Assembly (NCBI GenBank): GCA_965637545.1 | Contig: OZ281498.1 | Span: 17,608,001 to 17,672,000, forward strand | DNA length: 64,000 nucleotides | Direction: 5' to 3' | Source of the DNA: Phallusia mammillata | Lineage: Eukaryota | In this document: positions 28,501 through 64,000 of the stretch, one piece after another | Numbering within the stretch: the stretch's first letter is position 1 | How the letters are laid out: every line of letters begins with the position of its first letter | Notes under the pieces: generated by a model | Databases searched by the model: none | Told to the model about the DNA's origin: nothing | What the model saw: only the letters and a program-made list of their open reading frames with translations | Made by a program: the position numbers and the translations under genes

Positions 28501-31500
28501 TTTTGCAACAATACACTGTTTCTCAACCCCGAGTTGGTAAAGAGTTTATGAAAGTGTTTACATTTTTGGTGGTATTTTACATCGACATTTTAAGTTTATT
28601 TTGCAAGACATTTTCCTCACATCAAAACTAAACGCTGACAGGGTGAAAGTATTGTTATAAGTGTCAGAAAGAGTCGAAAAATACAGATAATAGCGCACAA
28701 ACAAAATCTAAACACAGACACACATTTTAATAAACAACACCCTTTCAAACCATAGTACGCCAGGCCTATAAAAAGGCGTTCAAGCGAATCGAATTGTTTT
28801 TTTATTACTTCCGTGCGGCAAGCCATGTATCGCATTCCCCCACAGGATAGATTTTTCATAGTGCTAACAGGCCTGGCGTATTGTAAATTATATATCGGTG
28901 TATGGTTGTCGTTGGTAAACGTTTCCGGGTTGAAGCCAGTATACCGCAACATTTAACATACATAGTCTATTTATAGTTTTTAAGCCTAAAGATTAACCTT
29001 CACGAGACAGCACTTCCAAAATCTTATCTTCAATATCCTTCAGTTGCCTCTTGTTTCTTGCTCCTTCCAAGATCAACTTATTCTTCTTCTGTTCCAACTC
29101 CGGACGCTCTTTGGCGGCGACAAGAGTTAGAAGTTGATCTTCCAAACCAATCGGCGTAATCATAAAGTTGATCAGGGTAACCTACATTCAGTAAGTGCAA
29201 TAGACAAACAATTCAAACACTGAGGTATCGAACATTTCAGGTGACTAATAAGTAACCTACACTCAGCAAGTGCAATAGACAAAGATTTCAAATAGTGAGA
29301 TATTGAACATTTCAGGTGACTAATAAGTAACCTACACTCAGCAAGTGCAATAGACAAGGATTTCAAACACTGAGGTATCGAACATTTCAGGTGACTAATA
29401 AGTAACCTACACTCAGCAAGTGCAATAGACAAAAATTTCAAATACTGAGATATTGAACATTTCAGGTGACTAACAAGTAACCTACACTCAGCAAGTGCAA
29501 TAGACAAAGATTTCAAATACTGAGATATTGAACATTTCAGGTGACTAATAAGTAACCTACACTCAGCAAGTGCAATAGACAAAGATTTCAAACACTGAGG
29601 TATCGAACATTTCAGGTGACTAACATACCAACTAAAGGTTCTAAAGTAAAAAAATCGTTTATACAATTCAAATTGACAGGTAAAGGTGAAGTTCAATGGA
29701 TGTTTATGAACCTAATATCACCAATTCTTTGGAATAAGCTGAATATTTGCAACAATAAAAATAAGTTTGGAGTTTAATTCTACAAACAGTTGGCAGCAGA
29801 ATACAGCTTGTGTAGTGGTAAATACGAACAAGTCTAAGTCTCCCTTATGAAAACAGTTGCAGATAAAGTAGATGCAAGTCATTTCAATATAGATAAAACG
29901 ATTCTAACCCATCAAATACAAACAGTAATTCCAAACACAATTTTTGTCATAACATTAAAACGCACCTTGACTGAAACTTCAGGCAAATAATGAGGATTTC
30001 TCATTCTTGTGCTGATGTACAAGACAAAATCGTGGCTGTATTGTATGGTGCTCTCCCCAAGCTTAATGTATTCCATTCCACTTTGCTTAAACGTTTGTCG
30101 AAGCAAAAGTGGATCAAGAACTGTGTCCAAGTGTTCCGGAACATTCTCAATCAGCAGAGGATTGCCAAACTAAAAACGCAACATTAAATGTATATACAGA
30201 GGCCATATATCAGAGGAGAATTGTAAACCGTAAAAAAGTGAAGGGCGTTGGGTCAGATCACACTCAGATTTTAACATCGTTTACAGTTGGAATATGGCGG
30301 ACAAAGGACCTGAGGTTCAAGCAAAGCTTTACTTAAAATAACACTAATAAAACATTTGCAATAAAAGACGCAATTTTGTTATATGGACTGTAATAAGTTT
30401 CAGATTGTGCAACGTGATCAAGTTTAATTGAAAAATTTACACAAAATTACGTAAAGAAAACACTTCTTCGGTAGCCTTCATGGAACGAATAATAGAATTC
30501 TACTAGCGAAGTTAATAACTATCTAATAAACTGTTTCGAAAAAATATTTAGCTGTAAGTTTGTATGTAACACGCTTTTTATACTTGGTAATTTAATAACC
30601 TGTATGCAGTTTTCAAGTGTTCGAAAATAATCCGCATCAGTGAGTTTACAAACGTGGAGGTTGTTTTTCTTCTCCATGTTCTTCACCCAAGCGCATGCCT
30701 GTCCCTGTGGGTCGATCATGAGAGGCCAGCGACTTGCATTGTTCACTATTATAGCGTTGTCGACCGACGTGCTTAAAAAAAGTTACACAAATAATTTAAT
30801 CAATATTCATGATTTTGCATTCAAGTTTCTATTTTAAAACGGCGTTGAATCAGGAATAGCTTAAACATAGGCTACACTAGCCAAATCTCTCATCACCAGC
30901 TACACTGACGACATCTTATAAGTCGAAACAATGTGCACTGTTTGCAGCCTAAACATATATTTATAAATTTTCGGCTCAAAGTGGAATGTCATATAACGTG
31001 GTTTGACAATCGACCCAAATAAAGTAATTACTGCTCAGTATGGAACATTACAATAAAAACGGAAAGAGCAGAATACTTATGTACACATTTATTACAGTTT
31101 GGTTATCACATGACGTCACTACGTTTTTTTGTTAAATGAGTTTCAAACTTCTGGATAGTTTTAGCTGAAACAACATAACTGTTGAGTCATTTGCAATAAA
31201 ATGGTTTTCTGTACGGAGCTGTCTATTTGGAACGTTCTGCTTTAAATTATGGCTGCATTTAAAGTACACTCAAATTGCTGTGAAAGTTATTTTACACGCA
31301 CAGTTTAAAACTCACTTGTCTTTCGGCAGCCCGTCCAGCTTCCAGTCCATGATTTGCACAGGATCTCCAAGTGTACGTGCAAGCGAGAAGTCGTCACTAA
31401 CGGGAATTTCTCGGCTTTTGCATTCCTCCCACCACTTTTTAAGCGATTCCTGAGTTAAAAATTTTAAGTACAACACATTGTTACACTTATAGCCGAAATA

Positions 31501-46500: not shown

Positions 46501-49500
46501 CAGAGGGTGGCAGGCTGTGCCACATTTTATTAGCAGCTGAACTGAACAGTATCTAACCCTTCAACAGGCAACATGGTCATCGACGATCACCGTTTATTTA
46601 ATTGTATAACCAAGAATGGAAAACATTTTCCAAGTTACGAAATCCGTCAATGAACAAAATGGAATATATATATATATATATTTCGTCTAATGGCATCTTC
46701 AGTTTCTATTTAAACCCCGAGATAATGCATCAATAAAAGGGAAAAAAGTAAAAACACAACAAAACAAAGTGAGACGAAAACACTAAACTGAAAACAGAAC
46801 ACTACAGACATTGCTGACACTGCCGCTTTCAAATTGGTTTGCCAAGCAACGTTAGACTGCTGACCCAACAGCGAGCCACGTCTTATCTTTGTCAGGGGCG
46901 CACGGCAAAGCTTTGGGCACAAAGGCGCAGACAAAAAGAAATACCCGGCAATGTAAAACAGGCAAAGCAGGAGAATAGAAATCGAGCATTTGTTGGTGCA
47001 GCATATGCAACAGGGCGCAGTGCGCCCGGCGCACACTAGCGGATTTACGGGGCAATCACATTTTTTGGATGTTTATGGAAGCACCAGTTAACTTAAGCCA
47101 TTTTGCTTCGGCCTGATCTAAGAGATCCACGTCAGGACTTTCAACAAAGGTCACCTCGAAGCATTTTGCAAGGTCGTTTTTTCATAAATGGCGGAATGAA
47201 TCATAGCAAAATGTTGACACGACGATGCGTTGTCGCTGTGTTGGCTAAAGTTGTTCGTTTGAAAAGTGTTCCAGATGGTACGGTGACCCGACCAACCCGT
47301 GCAAAATTTGTTTTTTGTTTGCCTAACGTACTGGCACTTACATAGCAAACAAGTGGCGACGTATATACCATGGCATTTGCAGTCTAATGATTGCTTTAGT
47401 GGTATAATTTTTCCTGCTCGGTCTTGATCTGTTCTGTTGAAGGAAGCATGGATTTGTGTTCTCCGTAGTGTCCACATAGAGCACACTTTCCGCAGGGGCC
47501 TGATAAGCCGCTGTGCGTTCCATCGTCAAATGCGATCCGTTTGTAGTTCGTAAGAATATTGCCAAGCGTTTTTGGTTTCTTAAAGACAATTTTGGCTTGC
47601 GGTTTTAAGTCTTTTTCTTTTGTGGAGAGTTTAAGAAAATCCGGGAAAGCAGTTGCCCACGGGATAATGTCAACATTATTTACAGCAGTGGCAGCAGGTT
47701 TAAATCTATTTTTCCATCCCTTTGCGGTACTGATACATGTTGCTGTGATCTCTTTGGGAAACGATGATGTTAAACACTTCCTTTGAAGGCGCGACAGACT
47801 TTTCAGGTATTCTTCATGGTTTTCGTTAAGACGGCGAAGGCGCGATGCCTCTCCCAACACAATAGCACGAATGATGCGCGGTGGATGGTGTGAGGCGCCA
47901 TGCCGAAAGCATCTATTTACCGCGATTTCCTTGGTGTGGTCTTTCGTAAAAAATCCCATAAGATGCCACATCGGAATGGACATGCAGAACGTCTAAGGAC
48001 TCAACCTGCCCTGCACGGTCATTCGGGCTGAGCACACGGAAAGTTAGCTGTCGCCCACCCTTTTGGAAAGCGTCTGTTCTTCCGGTCCCTATCGAAAACC
48101 AGATAATATCGTCTATGTATCGCTTGAACAACTTCGCTTTGTGCAGTGTGTCAGAGATAGACTCAACGATAAAATGCAAAGCGATGTTAGCAACGTAAAC
48201 TGAGTGATTGTCTCCTGTTGCAATCCCGGAGTTCTGCCCGTACAGTTTGTTGTCGTGTTGCACCACAACAGCACCAATAGTAAAAACAGTAAAATCCAGT
48301 AAGCATTTCCACTCCTCGGGTTGCCAACCCGAGTGACGCCTCAGAGCGTGTGTCAATGGCCTCCTTATCAGGTCGGGGCTATGGTTCGGATAAAAACCAA
48401 CTACGTCCGCTGCGACAACATATACCTTATTGCAGTTAACATCACCTCTTTCGATAGCACAAGTTTTCCAGTTATCAAGATCTATTAAATATTGTCGGCT
48501 ATCCTCACAGTACTCATTTACGGTGTCACGACAATACTTGCTAATTCGTCTCAAAATGTGTTCGAGTAGTGCTGTAAAACGGGTGCAAAACGCATTACGC
48601 GCTGCCTGGACCAAGCGAACTGGGATATCCTCGATTCTACACACATTAAGATGTTCTGGGGTTAGCTTATGAGTTTTGAAGAGAGGGTAAACGTAAGCTG
48701 TTTTTTTGTTGCCGAAGTTCTTGGCAGTAGGTCCCGGTACCTTGTTGATGTGGTCGGTACGTTGTTTTGCGCCAATCGTATGGAATAAGAGTTTTTCGGA
48801 AATAACTCCATACTTGAACAAAGAAATCACAAACTGGTCGTATTTGTTACTAGTAGTTCTAATAATGTGTTCGAGGCCTGTACATTTTTTCCCCAGTGTT
48901 CGGAACTTTTCCAGTTCCCTAGCAATAATTCTTTGATAATCCGAGAAATTGACAATTACAATTTTTCCGTCCTTGTCTGACTTGCATATTACGATGTCCC
49001 GGCTAAGAACTGCTGATTGAAGTTCTCGTAAGCTCTTACGGAGTTGCGGCGGCAAGTTATTTCTACGCCTGTAAGCCCCGTCGACGAAAGATTTCAGATT
49101 CCGAACTTTAGCTTGTGCAAGTTCCGTGAATGTGGTGGTTTCCTCACACAGGTCGTCGGGTTTAGGTCTGGAGTGTTTTGGAATCTTCAATTTATTGGTA
49201 GCGAAGGTTTAGGCGCGCTTTCATTGTTCTTAAAAGCGTCGGCCCGTTCAATGCGCCTGATGTGTGAAACAAGACTATAAGCGATTTGGCTTCCTCCGTA
49301 AAGTTGTTCCAGCGCGGCGTGGGTGCAAAGTTTAACCCTCGAAGAAGGAGCTTGGCGTTGACGTCCATGTTAAACTTGGACTTATCAACAATTGCTGCAT
49401 CGGCTCGTTGCAATTGTATTGCACGCGTGTTAAGAAATTTCCTTTTGCGGTATCTATTTTTGTCATTAAGATTTTTCACTTTCTGTTTGCAAGCATTGTC

Positions 49501-51092
49501 TTTCATCGGCTCGAGTTTCGTTCGCATCTTCGATTGTTTGTGCATATGCCAGTTGATCTTTTTTGAGTATTTGCGCAGGAGCGTATTACTACAATGCTGC
49601 ATTGCAAAGGCAAAAGAGGGTGACCGGCTGTGCCACATTTTATTAGCAGCTAGTGAGGTAGTGTGGGATGTTTTAAGTTGATTGGTAATCCTCCGTGTTT
49701 GTTGGATAAGAAGGAGATCAAAATCAATCCCCTTCTTAAAGTTGGACGGCAGGAGAACTTTCTTTGTTATGCACTTTCGTAGGAATGGTATCTTTAGCTT
49801 CGCTTTTATTGTTTTTTTTCTGCAGTTTTTCAAGTGCTGAACTGAGAGTATTTGAACTGATCGGTATCTAACCCTTCAACGGGCAACATGGTCATCGACG
49901 ATCACCGTTTATTTAATTGTATAACTAAAAATGTATAAAAGCATTTTCCAAGTTACGAAATCCGTCAATGAATAAAATGGAATATATATATTTCGCCTAA
50001 TGGCATCTTCAGTTCCTTCACTAAACTGAAAACAGAACACTACAGACATTGCTGACACTGCCGCTTTCGAATAGGTTTGTCAAGCAACGTGTAACTTGGA
50101 AAATGCTTTCCATTTTTAGTTAATTTCTTTTGTATGTGTAAAGTTGCTCTTTCATAGAGCACCGAGGACTCATTAATGACAACGCTTGACACACTTCATG
50201 ATGCACATTTTAAAAACATTTAACAAACACAACAAAAACAACAAAATGCTTTTTTACCATTAAGCGTACAGGGCGTATTTAAAATGTAAGCTACAAACAG
50301 AAACAAGAACAAATATGGATTCTTTACAATTTTGATTGCGAAAAGAGAGCCGAAAGTGATAACATGCACAATTTGGTTGTTGTTTAATACAACGTACATT
50401 CAGTGGTGAGTTTGAGCCGGTTGGAACTGGTTTGTGGGCGACTAATGAGTCACAGACCTACCTGCTGTTGTAAGGACAGACTTTACAGCACGCATTCCAT
50501 AATCGTAATGATGCTGGGAGGAAAGTTGCTCAGAGCATAATCTGTATGTTGCCACGATTTTTGCGGCCAAGTTTCTGGCGTCAACAAAGCCCATCGAATA
50601 TAGCGATATCTCAGCGATGAGAGCGTAGTCCGGTATCATCATGGCAACAGTGCGGAACAAAACTTTGAGGTTATCAGGAAGCTCCGCACGCCCTTGTAAA
50701 GAGAAAAGGCAATAATTTTTTTATAGACGACAAACAAAAATAATGTAAGAACACTTTCGTTTTCAGATAGTAAAATATGTGGAAAGCGTCCTTTAGATCT
50801 GTACGCGCAGTAAAATATTGGCAAGGCAGATTGTTATGGTGACTTGGATAGCAAAATCTGACATATATGAGTGATATGGTGCTACAGCGTTAAAAACGAA
50901 GCGTTTAACTCAAACCCACAACAAGTTAAAGAAACATAAAATGCTGATACCTGCGTATCCAGGGTTCATGGTGATAAAAATAGTACAGGAAGGATCCAAT
51001 GATATTTCAGTGCCTTCAAAGACGAAAATATTGACCTGGTCAGCCACTGCACGTTGTATGGTTTGAATCTGTTGTGCCACAACCGACAGCAC
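1229..51092 (-). CDS. DNAH3: Axonemal dynein heavy chain, inner-arm single-headed type (DNAH3-like); 5'-partial, 50 exons from AAA1 to the C-terminus
   Basis: Exons in transcript order, all GT-AG with consistent phases: 50951-51092, 50462-50692, 45707-45918, 44948-45115, 44789-44876, 44469-44599, 43971-44071, 43534-43666, 43028-43143, 42316-42412, 41710-41804, 41183-41387, 38911-39149, 38417-38570, 38029-38210, 37513-37660, 37292-37441, 36684-36870, 36403-36552, 36032-36222, 35413-35597, 35026-35131, 34750-34883, 34320-34542, 34092-34188, 33619-33803, 33311-33418, 32703-32857, 32165-32330, 31669-31869, 31316-31449, 30600-30771, 29966-30169, 28998-29181, 28053-28294, 27248-27408, 26667-26838, 26037-26180, 25393-25552, 24004-24164, 23347-23559, 22613-22805, 22207-22412, 4441-4563, 4166-4339, 3443-3616, 2906-3076, 2328-2438, 1823-1968, 1229-1301. 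Motifs: [19 protein letters not shown] and [19 protein letters not shown] (AAA1), [49 protein letters not shown]-terminal [21 protein letters not shown]...[19 protein letters not shown]3 rather than DNAH7 or DNAH12 is my recollection of paralog-specific motifs and needs a phylogeny. Confidence 0.95.
4811..5140. mobile_element. Non-autonomous hAT-type MITE (330 bp)
   Basis: Perfect 16-bp TIRs CAGGGGTGTCCAAACT...AGTTTGGACACCCCTG; 8-bp TSD ACTTAAGC at 4803-4810 and 5141-5148; subterminal GGCCCGCGG motifs; no ORF. Confidence 0.9.
5920..8958 (+). CDS. Nested small acidic protein, paralog A (~107 aa, unknown function)
   Basis: Model: 5920-5938 (ATG...GCT G|gtaagt), 8328-8382, 8709-8958, giving [32 protein letters not shown]...[25 protein letters not shown]; AATAAA at 9001. 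The last exon is well supported; the first two are tentative. Confidence 0.6.
6326..6697 (-). CDS. Possible single-exon 123-aa secreted or peptide-precursor-like ORF
   Basis: ATG start, hydrophobic N-terminus, [13 protein letters not shown] motif, hydrophobic C-terminus, minus-strand AATAAA at 6210-6215. No recognised family. Confidence 0.25.
   Translation of the reverse strand: MLWFMYFTITQFVLCLWRLQTQEVQCFYHIKSRETFGKRHTTNRMENYKPCDTQKTPFRRTSHCTRYIRYSIRSKVERVVVENTHHIFRFDGIVGTWGLFIGIVVNNTFVKYFCVGLPIHLVT
7128..7680. repeat. Near-perfect direct tandem duplication (period 279 bp, two copies)
   Basis: AGTGCACAAAAATGCTGAC...GGACAGGAAAGTA at 7128-7401 and 7407-7680; one substitution seen (accAaatggg versus accGaatggg). 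Confidence 0.9.
9688..9910. promoter_or_regulatory. Duplicated ~40-bp motif containing CRE palindromes, with nearby E-box-like sites
   Basis: AAGTGACGTCATCCTGAAG...GGGTTACTTCAGGTTTTA at ~9688 and ~9873; further GACGTCA and CACGTG/TACGTG sites nearby. Confidence 0.4.
13935..14837 (+). CDS. Nested small acidic protein, paralog B (105 aa, unknown function)
   Basis: Upstream non-coding exon ends ~13542 (|gtaagt); exon 13878-13951 with aaccATG GCT GTA CCC ATT TG|gtaagt; exon 14537-14837. Product MAVPIWDEYERNG...[43 protein letters not shown]. Confidence 0.8.
16788..16884. promoter_or_regulatory. Promoter/enhancer-like cluster of ETS and RFX X-box-like sites
   Basis: GCGGAAGT and CCGGAAGT in tandem; TTTACCATGGTGAC (16852-16865) and TCTACCATGGCAAC (16871-16884). 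The first X-box-like site is retained in the duplicate at 10556-10569. Confidence 0.35.
20095..21139 (+). CDS. Nested small acidic protein, paralog C (105 aa, unknown function)
   Basis: aaacATG GCT GTG CCT ATT TG|gtaagt (20095-20111) plus 20839-21139. Product [27 protein letters not shown]...[26 protein letters not shown]; missed by the ORF track on the + strand. Confidence 0.8.
22207..27408 (-). CDS. DNAH3: Dynein heavy chain AAA6 region exons
   Basis: [104 protein letters not shown]. Confidence 0.93.
22487..22555. mobile_element. Terminal fragment of a hAT-type MITE related to 4811-5140
   Basis: Reverse complement reads CAGGGGTGTATCAAACACGCGGCCCACAAGCCGCATGCGGCC, similar to the left end of the 4811 element; no clear partner TIR or TSD. 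Confidence 0.6.
24648..25031 (-). CDS. Candidate 384-nt in-frame cassette exon of the dynein (128-aa Pro/Thr/Ser-rich insert in AAA6)
   Basis: Acceptor ccctag|GT and donor A|gtatgt; phase 1 to 1 matches the flanking exons; stop-free and visibly more GC-rich than the surrounding intron. Confidence 0.6.
28053..34188 (-). CDS. DNAH3: Dynein heavy chain stalk/microtubule-binding domain and AAA5 exons
   Basis: Coiled coil plus [80 protein letters not shown]. Confidence 0.93.
29177..29623. repeat. 75-bp minisatellite, six units, overlapping a dynein splice acceptor
   Basis: Units start at 29177, 29252, 29327, 29402, 29477 and 29552 (GTAACCTACACTCAGCAAGTGCAATAGAC...TTCAGGTGACTAATAA); two unit variants in the order A-B-A-B-B-A. 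Confidence 0.95.
34320..39149 (-). CDS. DNAH3: Dynein heavy chain AAA3-AAA4 exons
   Basis: [87 protein letters not shown]. Confidence 0.93.
39733..39759 (-). CDS. Candidate 27-nt dynein microexon (KDHRLIRLT)
   Basis: tctgtgcttcatgcag|AAA GAT CAT CGG CTG ATT CGC TTG ACG|gtgagg; phase 0-0 inside the same phase-0 intron. Confidence 0.4.
40621..40638 (-). CDS. Candidate 18-nt dynein microexon (ERLDTQ)
   Basis: tttttcctgccatctag|GAA CGA TTG GAT ACG CAG|gtaaac; phase 0-0 inside a phase-0 intron. Confidence 0.4.
41183..45918 (-). CDS. DNAH3: Dynein heavy chain AAA2 region exons
   Basis: [32 protein letters not shown]...[50 protein letters not shown]. Confidence 0.93.
46661..46706 (-). ncRNA. Second, degenerate hammerhead ribozyme copy
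   Basis: GAAA-CUGAAGA-U-GCC-AUUA-GAC-GAAA-(UA)9-UUCC: core intact, one mismatch each in stems I and II, stem III expanded as a TA microsatellite. Confidence 0.6.
47151..49833 (-). pseudogene. Disrupted Penelope-like polyprotein (N-terminal region, RT, linker, GIY-YIG)
   Basis: Split across four ORFs in different frames (49192-49833, 47913-49190, 47396-47983, 47151-47486); the YIG half-motif reads YVRQ. Confidence 0.85.
49979..50016 (-). ncRNA. Minimal type I hammerhead ribozyme in the Penelope terminal repeat
   Basis: Minus strand GGAA-CUGAAGA-U-GCC-AUUA-GGC-GAAA-UAUAUA-UA-UUCC: stem I GGAA/UUCC, intact CUGANGA and GAAA core, stem II GCC/GGC, short palindromic stem III, AUA cleavage triplet. 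Confidence 0.8.
50462..51092 (-). CDS. DNAH3: Dynein heavy chain AAA1 exons (the two 5'-most exons in the window)
   Basis: [15 protein letters not shown]...[10 protein letters not shown] (50951-51092) and [22 protein letters not shown]...[12 protein letters not shown] (50462-50692). Confidence 0.95.
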
Positions 51093-51966
51093 CTAAACAG
51101 AGCACAAGAGACGCGTCAGTTGAAACAATAAACATTGCGATTCAGACATTAGTTCGGTGTTATTTATGTATCATAGATGCTTCAATATAGAGTGTAGTTA
51201 ATAGATTAGGTTGTTGGTGATGGTGGCGTTTGGCAATAACAATGTCTGCTGCTTCGCATTTTTTGTAACAACGTTGAATTAAAGTAGGCTACAGACTTCA
51301 GTGCGACCTAATACTGAAAGTGATAGAAGTGCGACAGTGTAATTTTGTGGCCGACAAAACCGTTGGACTACAATTCACTAATGAACTTTATAAAGATTTT
51401 AACTCGAATTTGTGCTTTGCAAGGTTTGTTTTGGTTAAAAGTTAAAACGTATTTTCAATTAGAAATCAAAGCACTATTTACAGCGATTTAATGGTAAAAG
51501 CTCAGTGGGTAAATGTGTGAGAAACCAGGTAGGCGGTAGTGCATTGGGAAGTCGGAAACGCGTATTTTACCATAGACAAACCACAAAGAATTTGTCTCAT
51601 TTTCATAAGAACCAAACGCCTCTTTGTGGCTGGTGTGATAATGCGAAACAAGACCGGCGTAATAAAACTTTGCTTGTAATAAGTTTATTGCTAAACTTTG
51701 CCAGAATAATAAATGTAAAAAAGCAGTAAACGTGTTTTATGATGTTCGGCTAAAAAAATGCTTGCAATGGAAAGAAATGTATTCTTGTGCGTGTGAAATG
51801 TATAATGCGATATTAGAAGTGTCTAGCAAGCATCAGATTTCGTTGTCAGAATGAATAATTGTTTAATTTTTGATGTTTTTCAAATTGCAAATTGTGTGGA
51901 TTTTGCAATTGAAATATGTACAACATATGATATAACCCTGTATTTTTAGCACACCTTTTTGCAGTA

Positions 51967-54900
51967 ATGTTTCGTCGGCTGTGCATTCCACTTGTTGTTA
52001 CGATATGTGCCCAGTTTTTTATCGCCGTAGACGGCACATCGTGGACAACATTTGAAAATTGCACAACCAGTGATTGCTACATAACTCAGTCAAACACTTG
52101 TCTAAATGATAACTCCTGTGGTCTCGATGAGGCTTTACAGCTTGTATACCCCAGCGACTGTAATGCTTCGTGTGCCAACGGTTTAACAACAGTGTTATTA
52201 CTCTTCAATCAAGTAAGAAAATTTGAAGGCATAACGTTACACTGAATCTTAGGCATTTTAAAAACATCGGTAAAATTACTACGGTGAATCTAACAACAAA
52301 ATTTAAAACTGAAGGCGCAGCATTTTTTAGTATCAATGAAGTAATACGTTTCAACTCGACATTGCGTTTCAATGAGATGTTTCAAAATAGACTGGATGCA
52401 ATGGAAACTGCTATGACGGACGAAGGGAGATAGTTTATGAATGCTCAACAAACAACTGCACTTTAAAGGAAATAAAGCGGTGTTACAACCATCTAACATG
52501 TACAGGAAAAATTTTGACCGTCAATGGTCCATGCAGTGTTTCTTGTGGCTCTGGAAAGCGTAACGTTACCGATCACTGCAAAGATGGTAAGTTTAACTTG
52601 CAATGCAACGCGTTCCTTTTTTAATTGTGTGGCGATTGCTGGTCAGCGTAAACACTTTAGGGCTCCTACAAGTAATGAATACATGTTCATTATAGCTAAT
52701 ATTTTTACAAAGGTGAACAATGCTATTTTTGTTCTTCTAAACAAGATGCAAAAATGATATTCAAATCATTGTTTTATATAGTTAAGTGGCAATGTAGGTG
52801 GCACCGAACTTCTTTTTCACGGGATTTAAATATATTTTATAATCTGGATGTGGTACATGCGGCCTGGATTTGGCAAACTACCACCAAGCTTGCGTTTCGT
52901 CACACAAGTACAGTGCTATAACCAGTGACAGTGTTTGTTATCTATGTTACTCAACACAATCTAAAAGCTGTTCCTTACGCGTCAGCAAAAATTTAGTCAT
53001 CAAGTAAAACCTCATCCAGCAAGTTTCTTGCATCCATACGGATGACTAATAATTATTCATATTATTTAGTCATAGACAACAGTAATAGCTACAACTGTGC
53101 TGGTTTCGATGGGAAACCGACCAAGGTGCGTTTAGAAGACTGCAACACACAACCTTGTCCGACTTGGTCAACATGGGGGTCAGCAAGTAAATGTTCCAAA
53201 AGTTGCGGTAGTGGAACTCAACGTTATCTACGTGAATGCATGTATGAGGGATCCAATAGTCCAGGATTGTGCAAAACAGGTAAAGCAATACATTGCCTTT
53301 AGATTCAGTTGGTTTGTTTTAAGATACTGCTCGCACTACGGTAAACATTCCCCGCCAAGCTAGGTGGTCTTGCTGAAAGAAAATGCGTTTTCAAAAAAAA
53401 TGGACAAGCAAACATGATTGTGCTGACCAAGATTTTTCGATTCTAAGTCTTTTGTCACATCAAAATGTAATGTTGTATTGCCTGTTCGTTGTTGGAATTT
53501 TCGACAGCAATATTAGGGTAGCTAACTGCTTTTTATCCTGCACGGGGCTGCTGTTGCTAATCGGCTCTTGTATACATCACAATACCGTCAGATCATTATT
53601 AATGGAATCCTATTTCAGGTTCTGCAAACCGCAGTGAGTCATGTAACACACATGATTGTCCGAGTTGGTCTACCTGGGCATCTTATGGCTCTTGCTCACG
53701 TACATGTGGAACAGGAAGTCAATCTTACATAAGAGAGTGTAGATATCAGGGATCAAGTTCAAACTCAAGTCTATGTCCAGGTTGGATTACCACGTTTCAT
53801 CAATAACCGAATATTTAAGCTGTTGTTTGTTTGAAATAGCCATGAAACGCAAACGAACAACTCCAAAACTGACTGATAAATTTGCAGCTGTAAGAAATTT
53901 GTTGTATGGGCTAGACTTAGAGCTAGACCAATGTTTAAATTACGGCAATACAGTTTTGTGGGTAACAAACTAAACACCATGCTCGTTTCTTGAATCCCAC
54001 AACAGAGCAAAAATAACCTACTGCTTAAAATATTAGATTTTGAAAGAGACGAAATTTCATTGTTTTGTTATGTGCTAGAACAAACCAAAACCATGCAAAT
54101 ACTTTAAACAGTATGTCATATAAATTCAATCATACAAGAATATCATTAATTTTTTCGATTTACCATTTAGCATTTAAGCTTACATATAATTTAATGCGAC
54201 AAAAATATACATGAACAAAAGCGGTCGATCTACATGTTACAGGCAGTTGATCCGCAGCAATTAAGAGTTTGACACTTAAATTCATTTACCTACTTTATAG
54301 GCCAAGATAACAACACTACCAAGTGCAATACACCAAACTGCCCGACCTGGTCATCGTGGAAAACCTTAGGTTCTTGTTCCCGGTCTTGTGGAACAGGACA
54401 ACAACGTTACACACGAGTGTGTAATTACTTGGGTCTCACTCAAGATCTATGCACAGGTAAATTAAAATAAAACAAGTTCGAAAGGACATACATGCCCTGA
54501 GGTACTTGTAGTGACTGCTGTCCACATACATGACACACTAAGCCGGCAACGTATGTGAAAAATGCATCAAATAATTATTCAAAGAATATTTTCTGAGGTA
54601 TAAAATTGACAAGAACCAAAAAAGGATATCCTCTTCAGTTCATTTTTTGCTTACGGGTACCACTATAATGCAAACTAAACTTTTACTTTGTACAACCAAA
54701 CACAATGTGCCTTTTAGGTTCGTCATCAAAGACCGAAAACTGTAACACCACACCCTGCCCTTCGTTGTGGTCATCCTGGTCAGCTTGGTCAACTTGCGAC
54801 GCAACAAACGCATTGAGAAATGGAAAGATCACCAGAAACAGGTACATTTGCTATACATAAGCTGTGACATCTTTCAGCAGGATTTCGATCGTTCAAGTAA

Positions 54901-57900
54901 CTATAACAGTCTTGAGCAGAAAGGTGTGTAAAGGTTTCAGGTGGGTGTAACTACAACCAATTTTAGGAGAGGAAAGCAACTATTCTTAATTTGTAAGAAC
55001 ATATTTGCGCATCGAAAGACATTTGCTACTAACTAATGGGAATTAAACCACACACTCCTTTGTACTCTTGGCATTAACTAAATGTATTCTTAATTTTAAA
55101 CAGCTTTAAACTGGTATTTAGCTTACCATTGTACTATCGGATATTTTGTTTTATTTTGTGCAGAACATGCTACTCGGGTCTAGTGTACGGGCGTTGTGAT
55201 GGCAATACGGAACCAAACCTTGTTAAGGAATTGGAACACCAAGATTGTACATGGTGGTAAGTAGTTCATTGTAGAAAGCGTTAAGGCTTTGTTTTTATTA
55301 TGTGTTTGCTTGTGAAGTCAAACACAGATTGAAAAATGCTCTGGGGTATCACCTTGTGATCATTGGAGCTCGTGGACAACCGACCATTGTGGTACAAATA
55401 AAGGTATTTTGTAAGATAATAACGATGCTGTAGTGTTATGTATCGTACTAAAACTGATGCAAAGGTAACTATTGCATCTGAAAGGAGTTCAATTTTACTG
55501 TGGTTTTCTTTAACTACTATACCGCGTTTTCTTAAACATCTTTATAAACTAAAGCGGGAAAAAAACAAAAGAAGTAAAACGGTGTGTATTTTAGCGCGAA
55601 ATAAAATTTGGCTTTCTATCTTTAGTCATTGTACCACATCTGTGACCAGGGTGCTAGTGTAAACAACGACGCTTATGATAACAAAATATTATACTAACAC
55701 GCAGTGGTCTTAGTTTCGAAAATCACGAAAATTTTACTGTTTACGCAGAAACAAGGAGGAGATTTTGTATCGGTGTTTGGAAACCCGATCTGCTGAATAT
55801 TCACTGTGACATGAGTGATTACATAAAGGCTGCACCACCAGAACTGAGCACGGGTAGAAATGCATTTTATCGTTAACATATTCGTTACATTTAATATCGT
55901 CTGTGTTTAGATTCTGGAGGTCTAGTCGCTGGAGTTATACTTGCTTCAATTGCTGTGATTGTGATTTTATTGCTTTTGGCAAGATGTAAAGGCTACCTTA
56001 TTATCGAAATGAAACTCAACAATAATAAAAATAAGACTGAAAATTCTAGAGTGAATGAACACCGAAAACCGCCAAAACCCAATCCCTACGCAACGCAAGA
56101 CGGCAATGCAAGGTTGGTTACTAGATTTTCTTGCAAAATGTTTTTGCCTCGGATACGAGAGATATTTACATTCGTCTCACTTACAAGTCTTCTAAAAACT
56201 AGGACGCGACAAAGTAGAAATGATAACAGAAAACCCTTTGGATGCTTTCTTTAGCTACAAATCAAAACTTTTACATTTGTTGCAAGCGTTTTCAGAATTT
56301 ATTCTTATCATTATCTGATAGATGCCTAAACAAACTTAATCTGTTACATAAAATGTCTATGAATAAAAAGTTAACGTTTTTCATCATGTGTCATTAGCTT
56401 AAACTATTCTCTTTAGCAAACACATACACGTTGAAGATGAGTTTAGTTCGGATGGAAGCTCAACCCAACCAGCAAATGGGACTAAAAATACAGGTAGTCA
56501 TGAACACAGGTCTCAAGCCCATCGTTTTCCGTTTCTGAAATAAGCTACGCACACCAGACAACGACGTGTTGAACGAGCGCTTCTTTTTATTCGATCCTTA
56601 TTAGAATTAGGAATAACCACCCCATTGAATTACCGGTCGAAACAGAATAAGAATAGTATGTGCTGTGTTGTTTAGGTTACGAGAACATAAGTTTGTCGAG
56701 GAAACTTCCTTCCAGTTCCTCCGAACCTGTTCCTCGACCCGGCAGTATGGATGCTGACGGTTACGTAAAACCCAACCTATTACTGTAAGTCACAGCTGTT
56801 TACATATCAATTCAACCTGTTTTAGTGAGCTAAAACTTCGGTTTTGTCAACAGCTCAAACAACCTTTACGAAGACGCGACAGCCAAGCCCGTTTTTATCC
56901 AGCCCATTACTTCCCCAGGTATATTTTTTACTTTCGCTTTGTTATTACATAAACTTTCAGGCTTTTACTAGGTTCAAGAAATGATATAAATTTGTTTTCA
57001 ATAGGATTACAAAACGAGGTTTTGTACGACACAATCATTATGCAAACCGTTGTTTCTGAAGGTGCGTTTGCCTCGAGTTTTATGTTCTTTTTCATCGAAA
57101 CATAAATCGAAAAATATAACAACTTATTTTATACGTTCATACCAGGCAACAAGAAAACTACCGGAAAACCAACACCGCCAACCAAACCTAACAATGCATC
57201 TCCGAAGAAACACTACGTTAATATTCAGTATGTTTTAATCCGATCAAGATAAAAAAAATAATTAAAATGATACAAAGCAACTTGTAAGCTAATAAACTGA
57301 TGCTTATAAAGGACAAAGGCAGAATCGCCAAAACGGGACAACAATAATCAGAAGAAACCTCCCATCATGCCACAAGTGAAACCACAACCGAAACCTCTTT
57401 CACCGAAACCTAAAAATCTTCCGACTGGAGGCAAGTGGGCAAATGGGGAGAAAAACTATCGTATAAATAAAAAAAGCATTGTACAGGCGCAAGCGATCTT
57501 GAATTGGTGGTTTGTTTTCTATGCCTTGCCATGACAAATGAAAATAAAAAAGAAACAGATTTACAAAAAAATAAAAGATGCTTGCCTTAATGCTAAAGTA
57601 ATAGTTTACCAAAGATATAACATGACAAACATTAACATTAAAAAGGTGGAAACATCAAAACTCTTGCGAAGAAATTGGAAGAGTTAAAGACTGCAAATTA
57701 TTCTGAGGATGAGCCTAATCTTGACGCATCCGTTACCAATACACAGTAAGGAATTCAATTTCGTGTCCTCCTTTCAAGCTAACTTTACAAAAAATCACAA
57801 GAAATGTGGTTGTGCAAATACATATGGTCAAGCCCCAAAAAATAATAAGTACAGTTTGTCATTCAAGTGGACAAACCGGTATTTTAAGATTTAACTTTGC

Positions 57901-58320
57901 CAGATCCTCGTCAACGACCACATCAGCAATCTCAAGTGTAGCTGACACAAAAGCCAAACTGGCGCAAATGTTTAATAAAGGTAAGGGCATAAATTAGAAA
58001 ACATAAGCTAAAGTATAGAATTTAAACAAGCAGTTGTGAACAAAATCTCGTCAAATGAATTTTAAACCTTCGTTACGTTATATTTTGCTTCGGTGTGTCA
58101 TCTATAATTCTTGTGTCAGCTATAATTCAGTCTTGTTACAAACAAAAACGGTAAACAAATGGGCGAAAATTTTGTTACAATTTTGTTTTAATTTTTTTAC
58201 GTTTTAGGTATCGACGACCAGTCGGTAAACAACCAAAACAGCAAACCAGCAACTAGTCCAACTAGACAGGCTGGAAAATACAAGCAGCCTGCGATAATGC
58301 CCCCAGTAAAACGCATGTAA
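51967..58320 (+). CDS. TSP1-repeat type I transmembrane receptor-like protein 1 (~758 aa; signal peptide, ~6-7 TSP1-like repeats, TM, long Tyr/Pro-motif tail)
   Basis: Phase-consistent exons: 51967-52212, 52391-52586, 53076-53279, 53619-53780, 54301-54456, 54718-54841, 55164-55256, 55318-55403, 55749-55853, 55911-56112, 56417-56493, 56676-56784, 56854-56918, 57005-57061, 57146-57227, 57312-57434, 57904-57980, 58208-58320 (sum 2277 nt). WSxW...CSxSCGxG...R-x-C motifs; TM GLVAGVILASIAVIVILLLLA. Confidence 0.85.
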
Positions 58321-59134
58321 CGAAACCACGCCACGAAGCGGATAATGAAGATAAAATGATTTTAGTCTTCTGCAAAAAAAAACATGTGTTTTTATCAAAA
58401 CTGCTGAAAAAAATGATGACAGACCAACACCACCAAAGGAGTCAAAAATACGAAAAACTATTTTTGCATTAATCATCAAAGCAAACTTTACATCTTGATA
58501 AAAAAATACCAGTGGTTCACGACATTCTTTAATTATTTGAAACGCATAGGCCATAACCTGTGTGGTGCAATCTTTTCAAAAATAATCTTTTTGAAAAGGG
58601 TTTGCAAAAGATATGTACAAGATCAATCATAAGTAAATTATAATTTGTGAAAAGGCCCTGTAATGCGACATGACCACCTATATGTGGGCCCAATGGACGC
58701 TCACTAATCACATTCGTGTGCAATGATTTTATTAAATGTTATCGGTTGGAAGATTTAATATAGACTCTTTTTATTGTCACTTGACGTTTGATTGAAAACA
58801 TAATGTCCAGAAAACCTGTGTGTGTCAAGCACACAAACATTTCATTAAGTCCCATAATTGGTCGAGTCATGAGATTAGCGTTTAGTGTGATAATTCAAAA
58901 CCTCGTGTTGTAATTATATCTTTACATCCTACGCGCATTTCAAATCGCATTGTTGTTGTTTTGTTCGCATGTATAGTTTAATATAATAAACATAACAAAA
59001 CGATGTTCCGTCAACTTATCTCACTATGCAAACTAAAGAACAATGCAAATCTTAGTTCCTCCCATATTCATTCGCAGCAGAACTGTAAAAGTCGAAGTGT
59101 CAACTAGGTAACCAAGACTCACAAACGTATAGCC

Positions 59135-62037
59135 ATGGGCCTGCATAAAATTTCGTCGTGCGTACTTTTGGTCTTGGTATCATTGGGATTGAAAATAAGT
59201 GGAGCTGTTTGGTCACCATGGACTACTTGTTCGAGTAATAGCTCATGCAATAAGCAAAGGATACAAAAATGTGTCGTTGATGGCTATTCAGTTGAGGGGT
59301 GGAGATGTGTTAAACCTAATATGTATTATAAAGAACTTTGGACGGGTGACTGCGCTGGTGGATGTCCTGGAAAGCGGACGGCTCCCAAAGTAAGAGGCAC
59401 AGAGAAAATTATAAATACTACCTTATGAGCCATAAATGAAAAAGTGCAAAGTTTGATGTGATTGTTACATATACAATTAAATGTATCACAATGCAATAAT
59501 TTATTCGATCCAAATTATAGAAATTCAACAACGTTGTTCATAGTTGCAAAAACCTCAAAACAGTAACATTTAAACCAACAAGTGTATTCATTAGATTAGT
59601 GCAAGTTAATTACAAATTTCAGCAAACCAAGTTCTGCAATGGGACTTGTTATGACGCTACAGCAACGGTCGAATCTACGTGCAAGAAACGGCCAACATGT
59701 AAAAAGATTCAAAAACTTCGATGTTACAACGAACACAGCTGCTTTGGTATTTGGGTCCAATCAGATTTCACATGTTCAATACCTTGCGGCAAAGGAACAA
59801 AATTGCAGACTTTGCGTTGTAAAGAGCTCAACAAAGGTTCATCTTGTGATTGTTGTGTTTAGGATATGAGTGTGTGTACGTATATACTGTTACGTAAACC
59901 TACTTTACAACTAGCAACGGTAGTTTGCGATTGGAGCAAATAGCTTCGTGATATTTTAAGTTCACTCATTTTAAGAAATTTTTTAAAAACAGTTGTGACA
60001 TAATTTGGTGTGAAAGCTGACGGCAAACTTTAGAAAATGTTTTATAAAAGTTAAAAATTTAGTCCTGTTGGAATGTTTTGTGGGAAATATTTTGCAAATA
60101 TTTTTTCAAAGAGTTAAATTATTCTTTTTCCCCCATTCAAACACAGCAAAAAAACAAAGAGCAAGTCCCGTAAACCGTGTTTTTAGGCAGCTCGCAACTC
60201 GTACCTTCATACAATTGCAACGGAACAAACGGCAGCAGTGCGAGTGTTATAACAAGAAACACTCATGTGCCATGCAACATACAACCATGTCCCACTTGGA
60301 GCAGTTGGACACAATCTTATCCTTGCTCACAATCTTGTGACGGAGGAGTAAAGTTTTTAATGAGCAATTGTTTATACACCGGGCGTCCAAGCACATTATG
60401 TGGAAGTATGCTTATTTTACATATCTAACAATTAAAAAAGTGATTATTACCCACGTTAGAGGTGATATTTAACTTATACAAGTCTATGTAGTCATTAAGT
60501 TTTTTCCCCAATGTATGTATATTATGTATGTAGTAACAAGGTGACCAATGTAGTCCGTGTGGGGTGGAAATTCCAGCAATTCTAAGAGTATATAAGACAA
60601 AATTGCGCTAAACAGTCGCTACAGACTATATAACAAACTAACAACCATTTTTGCTGTTGGAAAAGCGCAACGAAACCGCCACAAAAAAGTAACATCTAAA
60701 AACGACCTTTGCAGTGTAAAAATCAAATACATAGCCTTTTGACAACACAACATCCTTTTGGCGACCCAGACATTAGAGTGTACAACTGAGACAACAAAGT
60801 TCAATTTACATGATGTCTAATATGCTAATGCTTCACAGGTACGTCATCAGTGCGCGTCAGACAGGAAACGTGCAACACAACACCGTGCCATGGCTCATGG
60901 AGCGCGTGGAGCTGTACGTTCAATACATCCGGGATTGTAGCGTTGCGCAAAAGAATAAGGTGGGTTAGCGTCTTCGAATATCTTTGAGATACTTACGGTC
61001 CTTTTCTGTTAAGAAAATGCCCCAAAAAAGAAAAGAAAAACCAATCGTGCGGAACCATAATAGAAAGCTGTCCATGTGTGGCGTCATTGGAGAGCGATAC
61101 AGTTCCGGTGTATATTAGTTGAGTACAACAATGGTGTTAGTTTAAAACAAAATTATACTAACCAATGTAGACTATATATCACTTAACGCAGAGCAAAGTT
61201 TACAAAATCTGTTTATGTGGAATAAAAACTTCATTAACAAACAATTATACTCGTTTTAGACGATCTCCAGAAACAAACTGTGCTTAACTTTCATTTAAAT
61301 AGTCAACAATATACTAATAAAAGCATCTTAAATAAACTTATAACACGCCCCTAAAATCATGCTTTCAGAATATCATATCATCACAATCGGAGTTGGATTG
61401 GTGTCAGTTATCATTATTGTTTTGCTAATAGCATGGAGTTGCAAGTTGTTGAAACGAATCGCGGCTTTGGAAAAGTAAGAAAAACATTTTTGCCATTATT
61501 GTTTGCGAAAACGAATTTCTTTGTTTGTTATTGAGTTTAAAAGTGAATAATCGTAACAAATTTGATTTTAGCATCAAGACAACTCTGCCAGAACACAGCA
61601 TGCTTCAAATCATAGGTGAGCAAAAAACAGTACAAATGTTCAGTAACACTTTCGCAATAAAACGGAACGTTAATATATTTCTCTTAAACTTACAGAGACG
61701 AATGAGGATTCCTACCAGTTTTACGAAGAAGCAGATAAAGTTGATAACTTGCGACCATACGCAACAAGGTACAAATTTATGAACTTAGTAGTAGATCTTC
61801 TGTCAAAAAGTTGTGTTTTTCAGTGAACAAATTGGACTGGTTGAATCTAGCCCTGGCATCGTATCAAGTGAGATTAATTTAACTTTACAATTGCTTGCAT
61901 TATGGAATCATTTTTTCTTTGCAGATAAAAGCATTGTGAGCAGTAGCAGCTATGTTAATGTTGGACACCGAAAAAATGTCTACGTAGACGTTGTGCAGCC
62001 TTTATCGGATTCTGAAGGGCAATATGTCAAAATATAA
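59135..62037 (+). CDS. TSP1-repeat type I transmembrane receptor-like protein 2 (shorter ectodomain, short Tyr-motif tail)
   Basis: Exons 59135-59389, 59623-59836, 60187-60405, 60839-60959, 61014-~61110 (donor uncertain), 61369-61474 (TM IITIGVGLVSVIIIVLLIAW), 61572-61615, 61696-61768, 61824-61867, 61925-62037. Signal peptide MGLHKISSCVLLVLVSLGLKISG; WSPW, CSIPCGKG, WSSW..CSQSCDGG and WSAW motifs. Confidence 0.8.
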
Positions 62038-62372
62038 TCGATATTGCACAAAATGAGTTTTCTACAGTTAACCGAATAAAAAAAACGAACAATAAATTGT
62101 TGTGATAAGTGCAACTGTGCCAGTAACCGTAACTATCTTTTTTCGTTCGATGTACATTTTACAATCGTTGACAAAATATTGCGATAATAAAGGAAGTAAA
62201 TGCATTATGTTCAATTTAACAGTTTTGATGTGATCACTTTTACCAAGCCAGATACAACTCAAAAAACGCAGTAAACATGCGAAACAATTAAAGTCATAAC
62301 TCTAAATCTTGACCAAATATTATCCTGAGACAAAAACTGTTTTGTGTACGGTGTTGCGGTATCTTATGTCAG

Positions 62373-62527
62373 GAAGCAATTCAATCACAATGACTTCCGT
62401 TTATAAAAACCATGACAGCGATAGTGATCAACGGCCAACACAAATTAGTAGACTCAAGCAAAAATTCCAAGTAAAAGAAAATACTGCATATGACAGTATA
62501 GTGAGTTCATTGGAACGACCGCCTTAA
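62373..62527 (+). CDS. Candidate alternative terminal exon of TSP1 receptor 2
   Basis: tgtcag|GA acceptor in phase 1 matches the donor at 61867; encodes ...TSVYKNHD...ISRLKQKFQVKENTAYDSIVSSLERPP*. Confidence 0.45.
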
Positions 62528-62748
62528 CATCCGGTAAGCAAGGACACTGACGTTTTAGACGTCTGCAACAAATCGTGCTGACCAAAAGAAAAACAACAGC
62601 ACAAAAATCAGTTTCTAGACACCTTCTTGACAGAAAAAAAACGTGCAATGATTAAATGTAGTCGTTCGATTATAAGCGTTCGCTACACGACAACCATACA
62701 GTAAGTTATAAAATTAGTACGTGAACAACAGACCCTTGACTGTACAAA

Positions 62749-63907
62749 ATGGGAAATATCAGATTCGAGCTTATTGGGCTAGTTATAGTGTGTATGTTTT
62801 GCATGGGCTATGGACAAAATTGGTCGGTTTGGACAAGAGCCAGGCACGATCCCAACGAAATGTCACGGCATGTTACATGTACAAGACACGGCGAAGTTTA
62901 CACAGGATCGCAATGTGTAAATGTGGGAGAAGTTTACACGGAAATTACTAACGGACATTGTAAACGAAACCCACTTCAATCCTTGTCAAGGGTAAGAGCA
63001 AAAAAAACTAGCTGATTAACCAATTATTTATGTTGAATGTATTAAAACAGGTTTTTGACACTGTGAACAGGATCTTGACATCTTAGCAGAAAATGCTGTT
63101 TCTAAAAATGATAAGCGAACTAATAAAAATTAGTGCCTGAATTCAACAATTTATGACAAAGTATACAAAACTGATATGAATGTTGCAGAAAAACTCATCA
63201 TCACAAGGCGGAAGATGCTACGACGCGTATACGGAATTCAAAGTCACATTTTTGTTTAATCCAAAGTGCAATAAGCGCCAGAGAACAAAGATGTACAATA
63301 ACAGCACATGTGATGGGATCTGGAATAGTACTATGACAAAAGCGTGCAGCAAATCCTGTGGCAGTGATAACTACACATATACAATGCGCTGCTATAACAA
63401 AGGTTGGTTGCTAATATAAGTTTTTTAACACAACGAGAAAGAAAAAGTGTCAAATGCCAATAATTCCGAAAGAGATCATCAATACGATAAAGCTCATGTT
63501 TCATTCAATACGGCAAGGTTCAAGACATACCCAATTAAAAAAAAACGTGCAAATGTTTTTCTTATAAAACCTAATGAAGCTTTTTACAGTTAAGGGACGG
63601 ATTAGGATTTTTTCTCTGCTTCATGTTGCAGCCAAAACATAGGTCTACGCCATTTTTCGCCTGTCGAACTTAGAAGTTTAATTTTATTTTAAAACTTGGC
63701 TACCTTTTTTAGACAACACATCCAGTTATAACTGCAAGGACAGCGATGGTAAATGGGCAATAAATGTAACACGGCCCTGCAACATACCGTCCTGTGCTTC
63801 ATGGGGACGTTGGAAAAAGACTCTTTGCTCTAATTCCTGCGGCCGAGGACATCGCACAGAAACCAGTAAATGTGTTTATGCAGGAGAATTAAGAATGGAT
63901 TGCGAAA
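62749..63907 (+). CDS. TSP1-repeat protein 3 (3'-partial, runs out of the window)
   Basis: Exons 62749-62991, 63189-63402, 63713-63907; signal peptide MGNIRFELIGLVIVCMFCMGYG; WSVW, CSKSCG and WGRW..CSNSCGRG motifs; same intron phases (0,1,1) as paralogs 1 and 2, and exon 2 is 214 nt as in paralog 2. Confidence 0.8.
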
Positions 63908-64000
63908 GTAAGCTAAATATAACTCAGAAGGTTAAATATACAAATATGTTGGCATTGTATATCATAATTGTGGTAAGAATCGTTTCAATTTGCACCTTTT

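What the first reader, a model, noticed from the sequence alone, without database searches (positions are those of the whole stretch)
51967..63907. Tandem array of highly diverged TSP1-repeat receptors with tyrosine signalling tails: candidate undescribed recognition-receptor family
Seen: three head-to-tail + strand genes share exon phases (0,1,1), a gtaaga first donor, the Cys/Trp scaffold and motifs (GxCYD, YNxxxCxG, SYNC, CNxxxCxxWxxW), but differ at most other ectodomain positions. Genes 1 and 2 have a signal peptide, TSP1 repeats, one TM helix and Tyr-motif tails. Known: clustered paralogs with variable ectodomains and ITIM/ITSM tails are the layout of immune and allorecognition receptor families, which usually use Ig or lectin domains; TSP1 repeats mediate adhesion and glycan binding. 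Inference: a TSP1-based analogue for immune, self/non-self or gamete recognition. I do not recognise an ortholog; no sema, ADAMTS protease, Ig or 7TM parts are visible.
Basis: partly seen in the sequence, partly recalled or inferred. Interest (0 to 1): 0.85.

Follow-up and report, generated by a model that had tools for sequence, protein, structure and literature searches.

The report
Sea-squirt thrombospondin-repeat receptor gene cluster
Three neighbouring sea-squirt genes, hidden inside an intron of a cilia-motor gene, encode an undescribed family of fast-changing cell-surface receptors built like immune-recognition receptors, but what they recognise, and in which cells, is not shown.

Summary
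Three + strand paralogs have clean gene models: g1 has 19 exons (792 aa), g2 has 10 exons (430 aa), and g3 runs off the window. g1 and g2 have a signal peptide, thrombospondin repeats, one TM helix and a Tyr-rich tail.

The first ~100 residues are not a TSR. They form a family-specific Cys-rich head with no Pfam or fold match. The cluster lies antisense in an intron of a DNAH3/7-type dynein gene. The same intron holds one unstudied ortholog in Ciona and at least four copies in Clavelina.

Variation is patchy. Clavelina CL3 alleles differ at 17/63 residues of exon 1 but only 4/158 in TM plus tail. A second, probably allelic, g3 haplotype differs at 12/71 residues in exon 2. g2 and Clavelina CL1 are nearly invariant, and dN/dS never significantly exceeds 1. 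ITIM/ITSM-like sites are only modestly enriched (p=0.04). No RNA run held the genes.

Verdict: a real, tunicate-restricted receptor family with an immunoreceptor-like layout. Immune-type recognition is the best reading (0.45), inferred only; adhesion and gamete roles remain open. Scan look-ups found no other report of this family, apart from a first-reader note on the g1 tail.

The parts
51967..58320 (+). Gene g1, 19 exons, 792 aa: signal peptide, head, 4 strong + 2 degenerate TSRs, TM, ~310-aa Tyr/Pro-rich tail
51967..52212 (+). g1 exon 1: signal peptide and first part of the head (phase 0); does not align with exon 1 of g2 or g3
52391..52586 (+). g1 exon 2: family signature (CxGxCYD..RCYN..C) and start of TSR1
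53070..54456 (+). g1 exons 3-5 (53070-53279, 53619-53780, 54301-54456): phase 1-1 TSR exons; exons 4-5 are extra relative to Clavelina CL1
54718..55853 (+). g1 exons 6-9: two degenerate TSRs and stalk (phases 2,2,1,1, as in CL1)
55911..56112 (+). g1 TM exon (helix at about 55922-55978)
56417..58320 (+). g1 tail exons 11-19: TGYENI (ITSM-like, Tyr at 56678), YVKP, YEDA, VLYDTI (ITIM-like, 57019-57036), YVNI (57214-57225), Pro-rich stretches
59135..62037 (+). Gene g2, 10 exons, 430 aa: signal peptide, head, 2 + 1 degenerate TSRs, TM, ~100-aa tail
61369..61474 (+). g2 TM exon (helix at about 61377-61433)
61925..62037 (+). g2 last exon with SSYVNV (ITIM-like), YVDV, YVKI
62373..62527 (+). Candidate alternative last exon of g2 (phase-1 acceptor; contains TAYDSI, compare SAYDSL in the Ciona tail); unproven
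62749..63907 (+). Gene g3, first 3 exons (62749-62991, 63189-63402, 63713-63907); continues beyond the window, so TM and tail were not seen
63147..63751 (.). Bubble in DNA run X2: second haplotype with 33 substitutions and 12 gap letters in 385 bp plus a 131-bp intron replacement; 12 of 71 exon-2 residues changed
50949..51092 (-). Last host-gene exon before the cluster: DNAH3/7-type dynein heavy chain, residues ~1390-1540 of ~4000-4100; the rest of the host's 5' part must lie beyond the window

Best explanation
A tunicate-restricted family of type I membrane receptors that works like germline-encoded immune or self/non-self receptors. SHOWN in sequence: signal peptide, a ~100-aa disulfide-rich head unique to the family, a variable number of TSRs, one TM helix and a low-complexity tail built from small exons carrying YxxPhi motifs. 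Also shown: a fixed position in a dynein intron, one copy in Ciona, tandem arrays in Clavelina and this genome, mosaic paralogs, a truncated copy, and divergent alleles in some members. INFERRED: the TSRs form a rod that presents the head as the main binding surface. Ligand-driven clustering lets Src-family kinases phosphorylate the tail tyrosines. ITIM/ITSM-like sites then recruit SH2 phosphatases (SHP/SHIP type), YxN sites recruit Grb2-type adaptors, and Pro-rich stretches bind SH3 proteins. Duplication and gene conversion supply new specificities on a conserved tail. The ligand is guessed to be variable (microbial surface or non-self cell); it is not identified.
For: Architecture and splice phases. 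Same layout in Clavelina P0020 and Ciona P0076. Copy number varies at one locus: Ciona 1, Clavelina at least 4, window at least 3; four copies lie on one contig of another sample. Clavelina CL3 positional alleles differ at 17/63 residues of mature exon 1, 0/71 of exon 2 and 4/158 of TM plus tail (Fisher p=2e-7), while host dynein exons show 1 non-synonymous and 14 synonymous changes in 329 codons. CL2-CL4 are 76-90% identical in exon 1 but 92-99% in exons 2-3, a mosaic pattern. CL2 is frameshifted before and in the TM exon in both assemblies. g3 has a second haplotype about 9% divergent. ITIM/ITSM-consensus sites: 5 observed vs 1.9 expected in four tails, p=0.04; YxxPhi 11 vs 5.7, p=0.015. Botryllus FcoR receptors show that ascidians use such clusters and motifs (PMC12582321).
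Against: No expression data: 12 probable RNA runs held none of the words of g1 or of g2 up to its TM exon, and 3 gave no contigs on g2/g3. dN/dS in the variable parts is about 0.7-1.1, with one noisy paralog value of 2.0, which relaxed selection or conversion also explains. In g3, introns are as divergent as the exon and the changes are not concentrated in the head. CL1 is conserved in its ectodomain (0.16) and its tail is the faster part (0.81). g2 is nearly monomorphic in the second DNA run. ITIM enrichment is not significant gene by gene (g1 p=0.06, g2 p=0.53). Only 2 haplotypes per species were compared.
Confidence: 0.45

Rival explanations
1. Adhesion, matrix or guidance receptors of the THSD1/UNC5/semaphorin-5 kind. 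TSRs bind glycosaminoglycans or matrix, and the Tyr/Pro tail docks cytoskeletal SH2/SH3 adaptors. The variation is a by-product of tandem duplication, gene conversion and weak constraint.
For: TSRs are mainly adhesion and matrix modules (established knowledge); nearest solved structures are thrombospondin-1, properdin, BAI1, UNC5 and SEMA5A. Single copy at an ancient locus in Ciona. Purifying selection on the CL1 ectodomain. dN/dS near but not above 1. g3 introns diverge as much as the exon.
Against: Orthologs share only 34-50% identity while flanking dynein exons share 71-99%. The CL3 allele difference is concentrated in exon 1 with the tail almost invariant. Repeated expansions in several species.
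Confidence: 0.3
2. Gamete-surface recognition proteins (sperm-egg coat binding or self-sterility), possibly co-expressed with the axonemal dynein host gene in testis.
For: Fast interspecies divergence and divergent alleles are typical of gamete recognition proteins (established knowledge). TSR proteins act in fertilisation: the Tast proteases of Ciona sperm and sea-urchin EBR1 (PMC9265791). The host is an axonemal dynein. Absence from RNA assemblies fits restricted expression.
Against: No expression data point to gonad. Ciona self-sterility is already assigned to s/v-Themis (PMC9265791). Antisense nesting does not imply co-expression. Long ITIM-like tails are not a feature of the known ascidian gamete proteins (my recollection).
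Confidence: 0.2
3. The window's copies are silent or decaying duplicates, and the second g3 sequence is a paralog rather than an allele.
For: No RNA support. Clavelina CL2 carries fixed frameshifts. Clavelina has near-identical tandem paralogs that could mimic alleles.
Against: All 32 exons are open with intact splice sites and cysteine scaffold despite ~60% divergence. The two g3 contigs share both end points and each has half depth (144+159 vs 295), as expected for alleles. The seen indel in exon 3 is in frame.
Confidence: 0.05

Closest known systems
Ciona LOC108950348 (XP_018671431) and Clavelina lepadiformis LOC143448562 (XP_076804484), CAK8698253/4
   Same: Same head signature, TSR, TM and Tyr tail; same first intron phases; same intron of the same dynein gene, antisense.
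   Different: Only 34-50% identical to g1-g3. TSR number, tail length and copy number differ. One-to-one orthology is unresolved (tree uninformative). All are annotated as uncharacterised or unnamed.
Botryllus fester co-receptors (FcoR) and Fester family (PMC12582321)
   Same: Ascidian type I membrane proteins in tandem clusters, ITIM and other YxxI/L/V motifs, intergenic recombination, a mix of monomorphic and polymorphic members.
   Different: FcoR/FF ectodomains are Ig-like plus Sushi; this family has TSRs and a novel head. No receptor/co-receptor pairing, fuhc linkage or functional data here. No hemITAM consensus was seen.
Hydractinia Alr family (PMC9546547)
   Same: Clustered, divergent type I receptors with ITAM/ITIM-like tails.
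   Different: Ig-superfamily ectodomains with genetically shown allorecognition; no sequence relation found.
TSR-containing receptors: THSD1/THSD7, UNC5, SEMA5, BAI/ADGRB; also properdin
   Same: TSR arrays of the same fold (Z 4-5 for one repeat).
   Different: No Ig, ZU5/death, sema, GAIN/7TM or protease parts. These proteins are conserved genes (established knowledge), and fetched generic TSR proteins score 6 bits or less on the head profile against 28-63 for family members.
Ciona Tast proteases and vCRL1 (PMC9265791)
   Same: Ascidian surface proteins with TSRs (Tast) or with high individual variability (vCRL1).
   Different: Tast is a type II astacin protease and vCRL1 uses Sushi domains; neither domain was found here.

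Membership tests
TSP1/TSR-repeat proteins | WxxW-CxxxCG-RxRxC repeats with six cysteines and the TSR fold | tested here: met
   Weak exon-level Pfam hits; local TSR profile 20-41 bits on four g1 repeats; homolog P0020 passes the Pfam cut-off; modelled repeat aligns to properdin/BAI1 TSR.
Ciona LOC108950348 / Clavelina LOC143448562 family | Head signature, intron phases 0,1 and position in the same dynein intron | tested here: met
Botryllus FcoR / Hydractinia Alr | Ig-like (plus Sushi) ectodomain | tested here: not met
   No Ig or Sushi hit in exons or homologs; the head model shows no convincing Ig-like match, though model confidence is low.
Germline immunoreceptor-type cluster (functional class) | Type I TM topology with ITIM/ITSM-consensus tyrosines | tested here: met
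   VLYDTI and TGYENI (g1), SSYVNV (g2), LNYLRI (CL1), SAYDSL (Ciona); pooled p=0.04.
Germline immunoreceptor-type cluster (functional class) | Tandem multigene cluster with copy-number change and recombination | tested here: met
Germline immunoreceptor-type cluster (functional class) | High allelic polymorphism under positive or balancing selection in the ectodomain | tested here: inconclusive
   Met for CL3 and g3 as divergence, not met for CL1 and g2; dN/dS about 0.7-1.1; two haplotypes each.
Germline immunoreceptor-type cluster (functional class) | Expression on immune or contact cells | tested here: inconclusive
   No RNA run held the genes; tissues unknown and absence not provable from contigs.
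Germline immunoreceptor-type cluster (functional class) | Phosphotyrosine-dependent recruitment of SHP/SHIP/Syk and a recognised ligand | not testable with these tools
   Needs experiments.
ADAMTS / semaphorin-5 / UNC5 / BAI | Protease, sema, Ig+ZU5 or GAIN-7TM domain | tested here: not met
   complete g1 and g2 models leave no room for them.

The most novel reading that the evidence does not exclude
A second, non-Ig polymorphic recognition system of ascidians. An ancient receptor with a new disulfide-rich head on a TSR rod and an ITIM/ITSM tail has been expanded in several lineages, its heads diversified by gene conversion and kept as old balanced alleles for self/non-self or pathogen discrimination. 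This would extend the ITIM-receptor design to a thrombospondin scaffold.
Probability: 0.2. Interest if true: 0.85.

Novelty: new variant of a known kind. Interest (0 to 1): 0.55.

Why it matters
Known allorecognition receptors of ascidians come from Botryllus (Stolidobranchia) and are Ig/Sushi proteins; recognition receptors in other ascidian groups are poorly known. This family combines a domain with no Pfam or fold match, a TSR stalk and inhibitory-type tails, and some members carry very divergent alleles. Ciona has a single copy at the same locus, so one CRISPR knockout plus existing single-cell atlases can test its role directly. If the family proves to be an adhesion or sperm protein, it remains a new tunicate gene family with a new domain.

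Tried and rejected
Joined (spliced) window proteins were never sent to a database search or fold tool. Searches used single exons by reference or tool-returned homologs. Joined models were only compared inside scripts with sequences already fetched.

Single-sequence AlphaFold of P0020 failed (pLDDT 36). The alignment-based model is of Clavelina P0015, not a window protein (mean pLDDT 65, poor over residues 27-43).

Rejected: the idea that the head is a degenerate TSR (profile score 0.6 bits or less; no structural match to TSRs). The best fold matches for the head (UTRA/chorismate-lyase-like, Z 5.4 or less, identity 12% or less) are within noise.

Word-indexed homolog searches added only Ciona isoform P0076 and generic TSR proteins. 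The ESM Atlas gave only generic TSR clusters. The tree could not resolve orthology. No further paralogs lie elsewhere in the window. No DNA-level repeats join the genes beyond one TSR motif.

Dynein exons were not within 10 kb of the ENA/JGI hits, so synteny is untested there and their species are unknown. Paper searches found nothing on the family, and Khalturin 2005 was not held. The Y[EDV][NDT] enrichment used a pattern chosen after the fact and is not counted.
Full report
1. Observation. I read 51000-64000, translated three frames (the window has no N) and built gene models by hand. g1 spans 51967-58320 with 19 exons and 792 aa. g2 spans 59135-62037 with 10 exons and 430 aa. g3 starts at 62749 and leaves the window after three exons. 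All introns are GT-AG except one GC-AG, and frames stay open. Exons 2 and 3 are homologous far beyond shuffles (z 9-19), exon 1 only between g2 and g3, and the two tails not at all. Identity over exons 2-3 is 37-42%. g1 and g2 each have a signal-peptide-like N-terminus and one TM helix. The models rest on sequence and homology; none is confirmed by a transcript.

2. Domain anatomy. Exon-level Pfam scans give weak TSP_1-clan hits only, because introns cut the repeats. A TSR profile built locally from fetched proteins finds four strong and two degenerate repeats in g1, two plus one in g2, and at least two in g3. It finds nothing in the first ~120 residues. That region (exon 1 plus the CxGxCYD..RCYN..C half of exon 2) is a separate head. 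A head profile scores family members 28-63 bits (partly circular) and all fetched generic TSR proteins 6 bits or less. An AlphaFold model of the Clavelina homolog P0015 (mean pLDDT 65) folds residues 1-103 as one beta-rich unit with no convincing match among solved structures (best Z 5.4). The following repeats align with properdin, BAI1 and SEMA5A TSRs. The model is weak in exon 1, so a new fold is not claimed.

3. Tails. g1 has nine tyrosines after the TM, including TGYENI (ITSM-like), VLYDTI (ITIM-like) and YVNI, plus Pro-rich stretches. g2 has six, including SSYVNV. Pooled over g1, g2, Clavelina CL1 and Ciona, ITIM/ITSM-consensus sites number 5 against 1.9 expected (p=0.04) and YxxPhi sites 11 against 5.7 (p=0.015); no single gene is significant for ITIM. 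An open segment at 62373-62527 has a phase-1 acceptor and could be a second last exon of g2. Its TAYDSI resembles SAYDSL in the Ciona tail. This is unproven.

4. Context and relatives. The - strand exon at 51092-50949 matches residues about 1390-1540 of DNAH3/DNAH7-type dynein heavy chains. About 1,400 residues of the host must therefore lie beyond the cluster, so the array is nested antisense in an intron. A profile of the three exon-2 sequences against 1.84 billion proteins found about 15 hits across the whole module. The named ones are uncharacterised or unnamed Clavelina lepadiformis and Ciona proteins; the rest come from unlabelled assemblies of similar GC content. In Clavelina (two assemblies) at least four copies follow the same dynein exon. 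In Ciona a single gene lies between that exon and the Walker-A exon. Intron phases match: CL1 has 0,1,1,2,2,1,1,2, and g1 is this plus two symmetric TSR exons; Ciona starts 0,1. The locus therefore predates the Phlebobranchia-Aplousobranchia split (taxonomy from my own knowledge). Orthologous ectodomains share 34-50% identity while neighbouring dynein exons share 71-99%. Another sample has four copies on one contig. No vertebrate or stolidobranch member was identified, within the limits of these searches. The window's species was not identified; it is a tunicate distinct from C. lepadiformis (dynein DNA mostly 70-85% identical).

5. Variation. Clavelina CL1 alleles are conserved (ectodomain dN/dS 0.16, tail 0.81). 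CL3 positional alleles differ at 17/63 residues of mature exon 1 (20 non-synonymous, 5 synonymous changes, ratio 1.1), at none in exon 2 and at 4/158 in TM plus tail (p=2e-7). Dynein exons show 1 non-synonymous and 14 synonymous changes in 329 codons. CL2-CL4 are mosaics, 76-90% identical in exon 1 and 92-99% in exons 2-3, which points to gene conversion. CL2 has frameshifts before and within its TM exon in both assemblies, leaving a secreted form or a pseudogene. In the window's species, DNA run X2 differs from g2 and its flanks at only 11 sites in about 4.3 kb. Over g3 it splits into two half-depth contigs with common ends, one identical to the window and one with 33 substitutions in 385 bp. 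In exon 2 this changes 12 of 71 residues with 4 silent codons, a ratio of about 0.7-0.8. The intron is equally divergent and exon 1 is not affected. An old allele is the best reading, but a very close paralog is not excluded. Overall, variability is real but patchy, and positive selection is not demonstrated.

6. Expression. Twelve probable RNA runs labelled as this species held none of the sampled words of g1 or of g2 up to its TM exon. The assemblies are small, the tissues are unknown and no positive control was laid, so this shows neither silence nor expression. The Clavelina and Ciona homologs have RefSeq isoform models, which suggests transcript support there (inference).

7. Mechanism. 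The best reading (0.45) is a recognition receptor. A TSR rod presents a variable head; clustering leads to tail phosphorylation and recruitment of SH2 phosphatases and adaptors; duplication and conversion generate specificities. The architecture and evolutionary pattern are shown; ligand, cell type and signalling are inferred. Rivals are an adhesion or guidance receptor (0.3), a gamete-surface protein (0.2) and silent duplicates (0.05).

8. Comparison. The family works like Botryllus FcoR and Hydractinia Alr in layout (PMC12582321; PMC9546547). It is not a member, because it lacks the Ig/Sushi ectodomain. It is not an ADAMTS, semaphorin, UNC5, BAI or Tast protein. No paper cites the four queried accessions.

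9. Limits. The joined proteins were left out of all database searches and folding, and were used only inside scripts against sequences already fetched. Allele comparisons rest on two haplotypes per species, and the two Clavelina assemblies differ by about 5%, so they may come from distinct populations.

Verdict: a real and undescribed tunicate receptor family, a new variant of the clustered Tyr-motif receptor design, function untested. Interest 0.55.

Noticed in passing
window 47396-49833 (-): Three long ORFs in a dynein intron that look like a broken Penelope-type retroelement (reverse transcriptase followed by an endonuclease part); judged by eye.
   Followed up: no
window 29177-29623 and 7128-7684: Tandem repeats: 6 x 75 bp (93% matches) and 2 x 279 bp (99%).
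   Followed up: no
window 62373-62527 (+): Open segment with a good phase-1 acceptor behind the g2 stop; possible alternative last exon that would swap the tail's tyrosine motifs.
   Followed up: partly
window 59160: Run X2 carries a Cys-to-Tyr change in the g2 signal peptide, the only listed amino-acid difference in g2.
   Followed up: partly
L001 17900-18330, L002 12050-12480: Clavelina CL2 has the same frameshifts before and in the TM exon in both assemblies; it may make a secreted ectodomain (annotated 288 aa) or be a pseudogene.
   Followed up: partly
L007 10001-13346: Clavelina P0044 (696 aa) has the head signature, more TSRs and a TM, but lies at another locus with a different exon structure and few tail tyrosines; one database labels it ADAMTS9-like although it has no protease domain.
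   Followed up: partly
L009 11937-12338: A family member in an unidentified assembly continues into a long Thr/Ala/Asp-rich heptad repeat, a possible mucin-like stalk.
   Followed up: no
L003 10001-10816: In this assembly the equivalents of exons 1 and 2 lie in one open frame, so the first intron seems lost or read through; two copies lie 8 kb apart.
   Followed up: no
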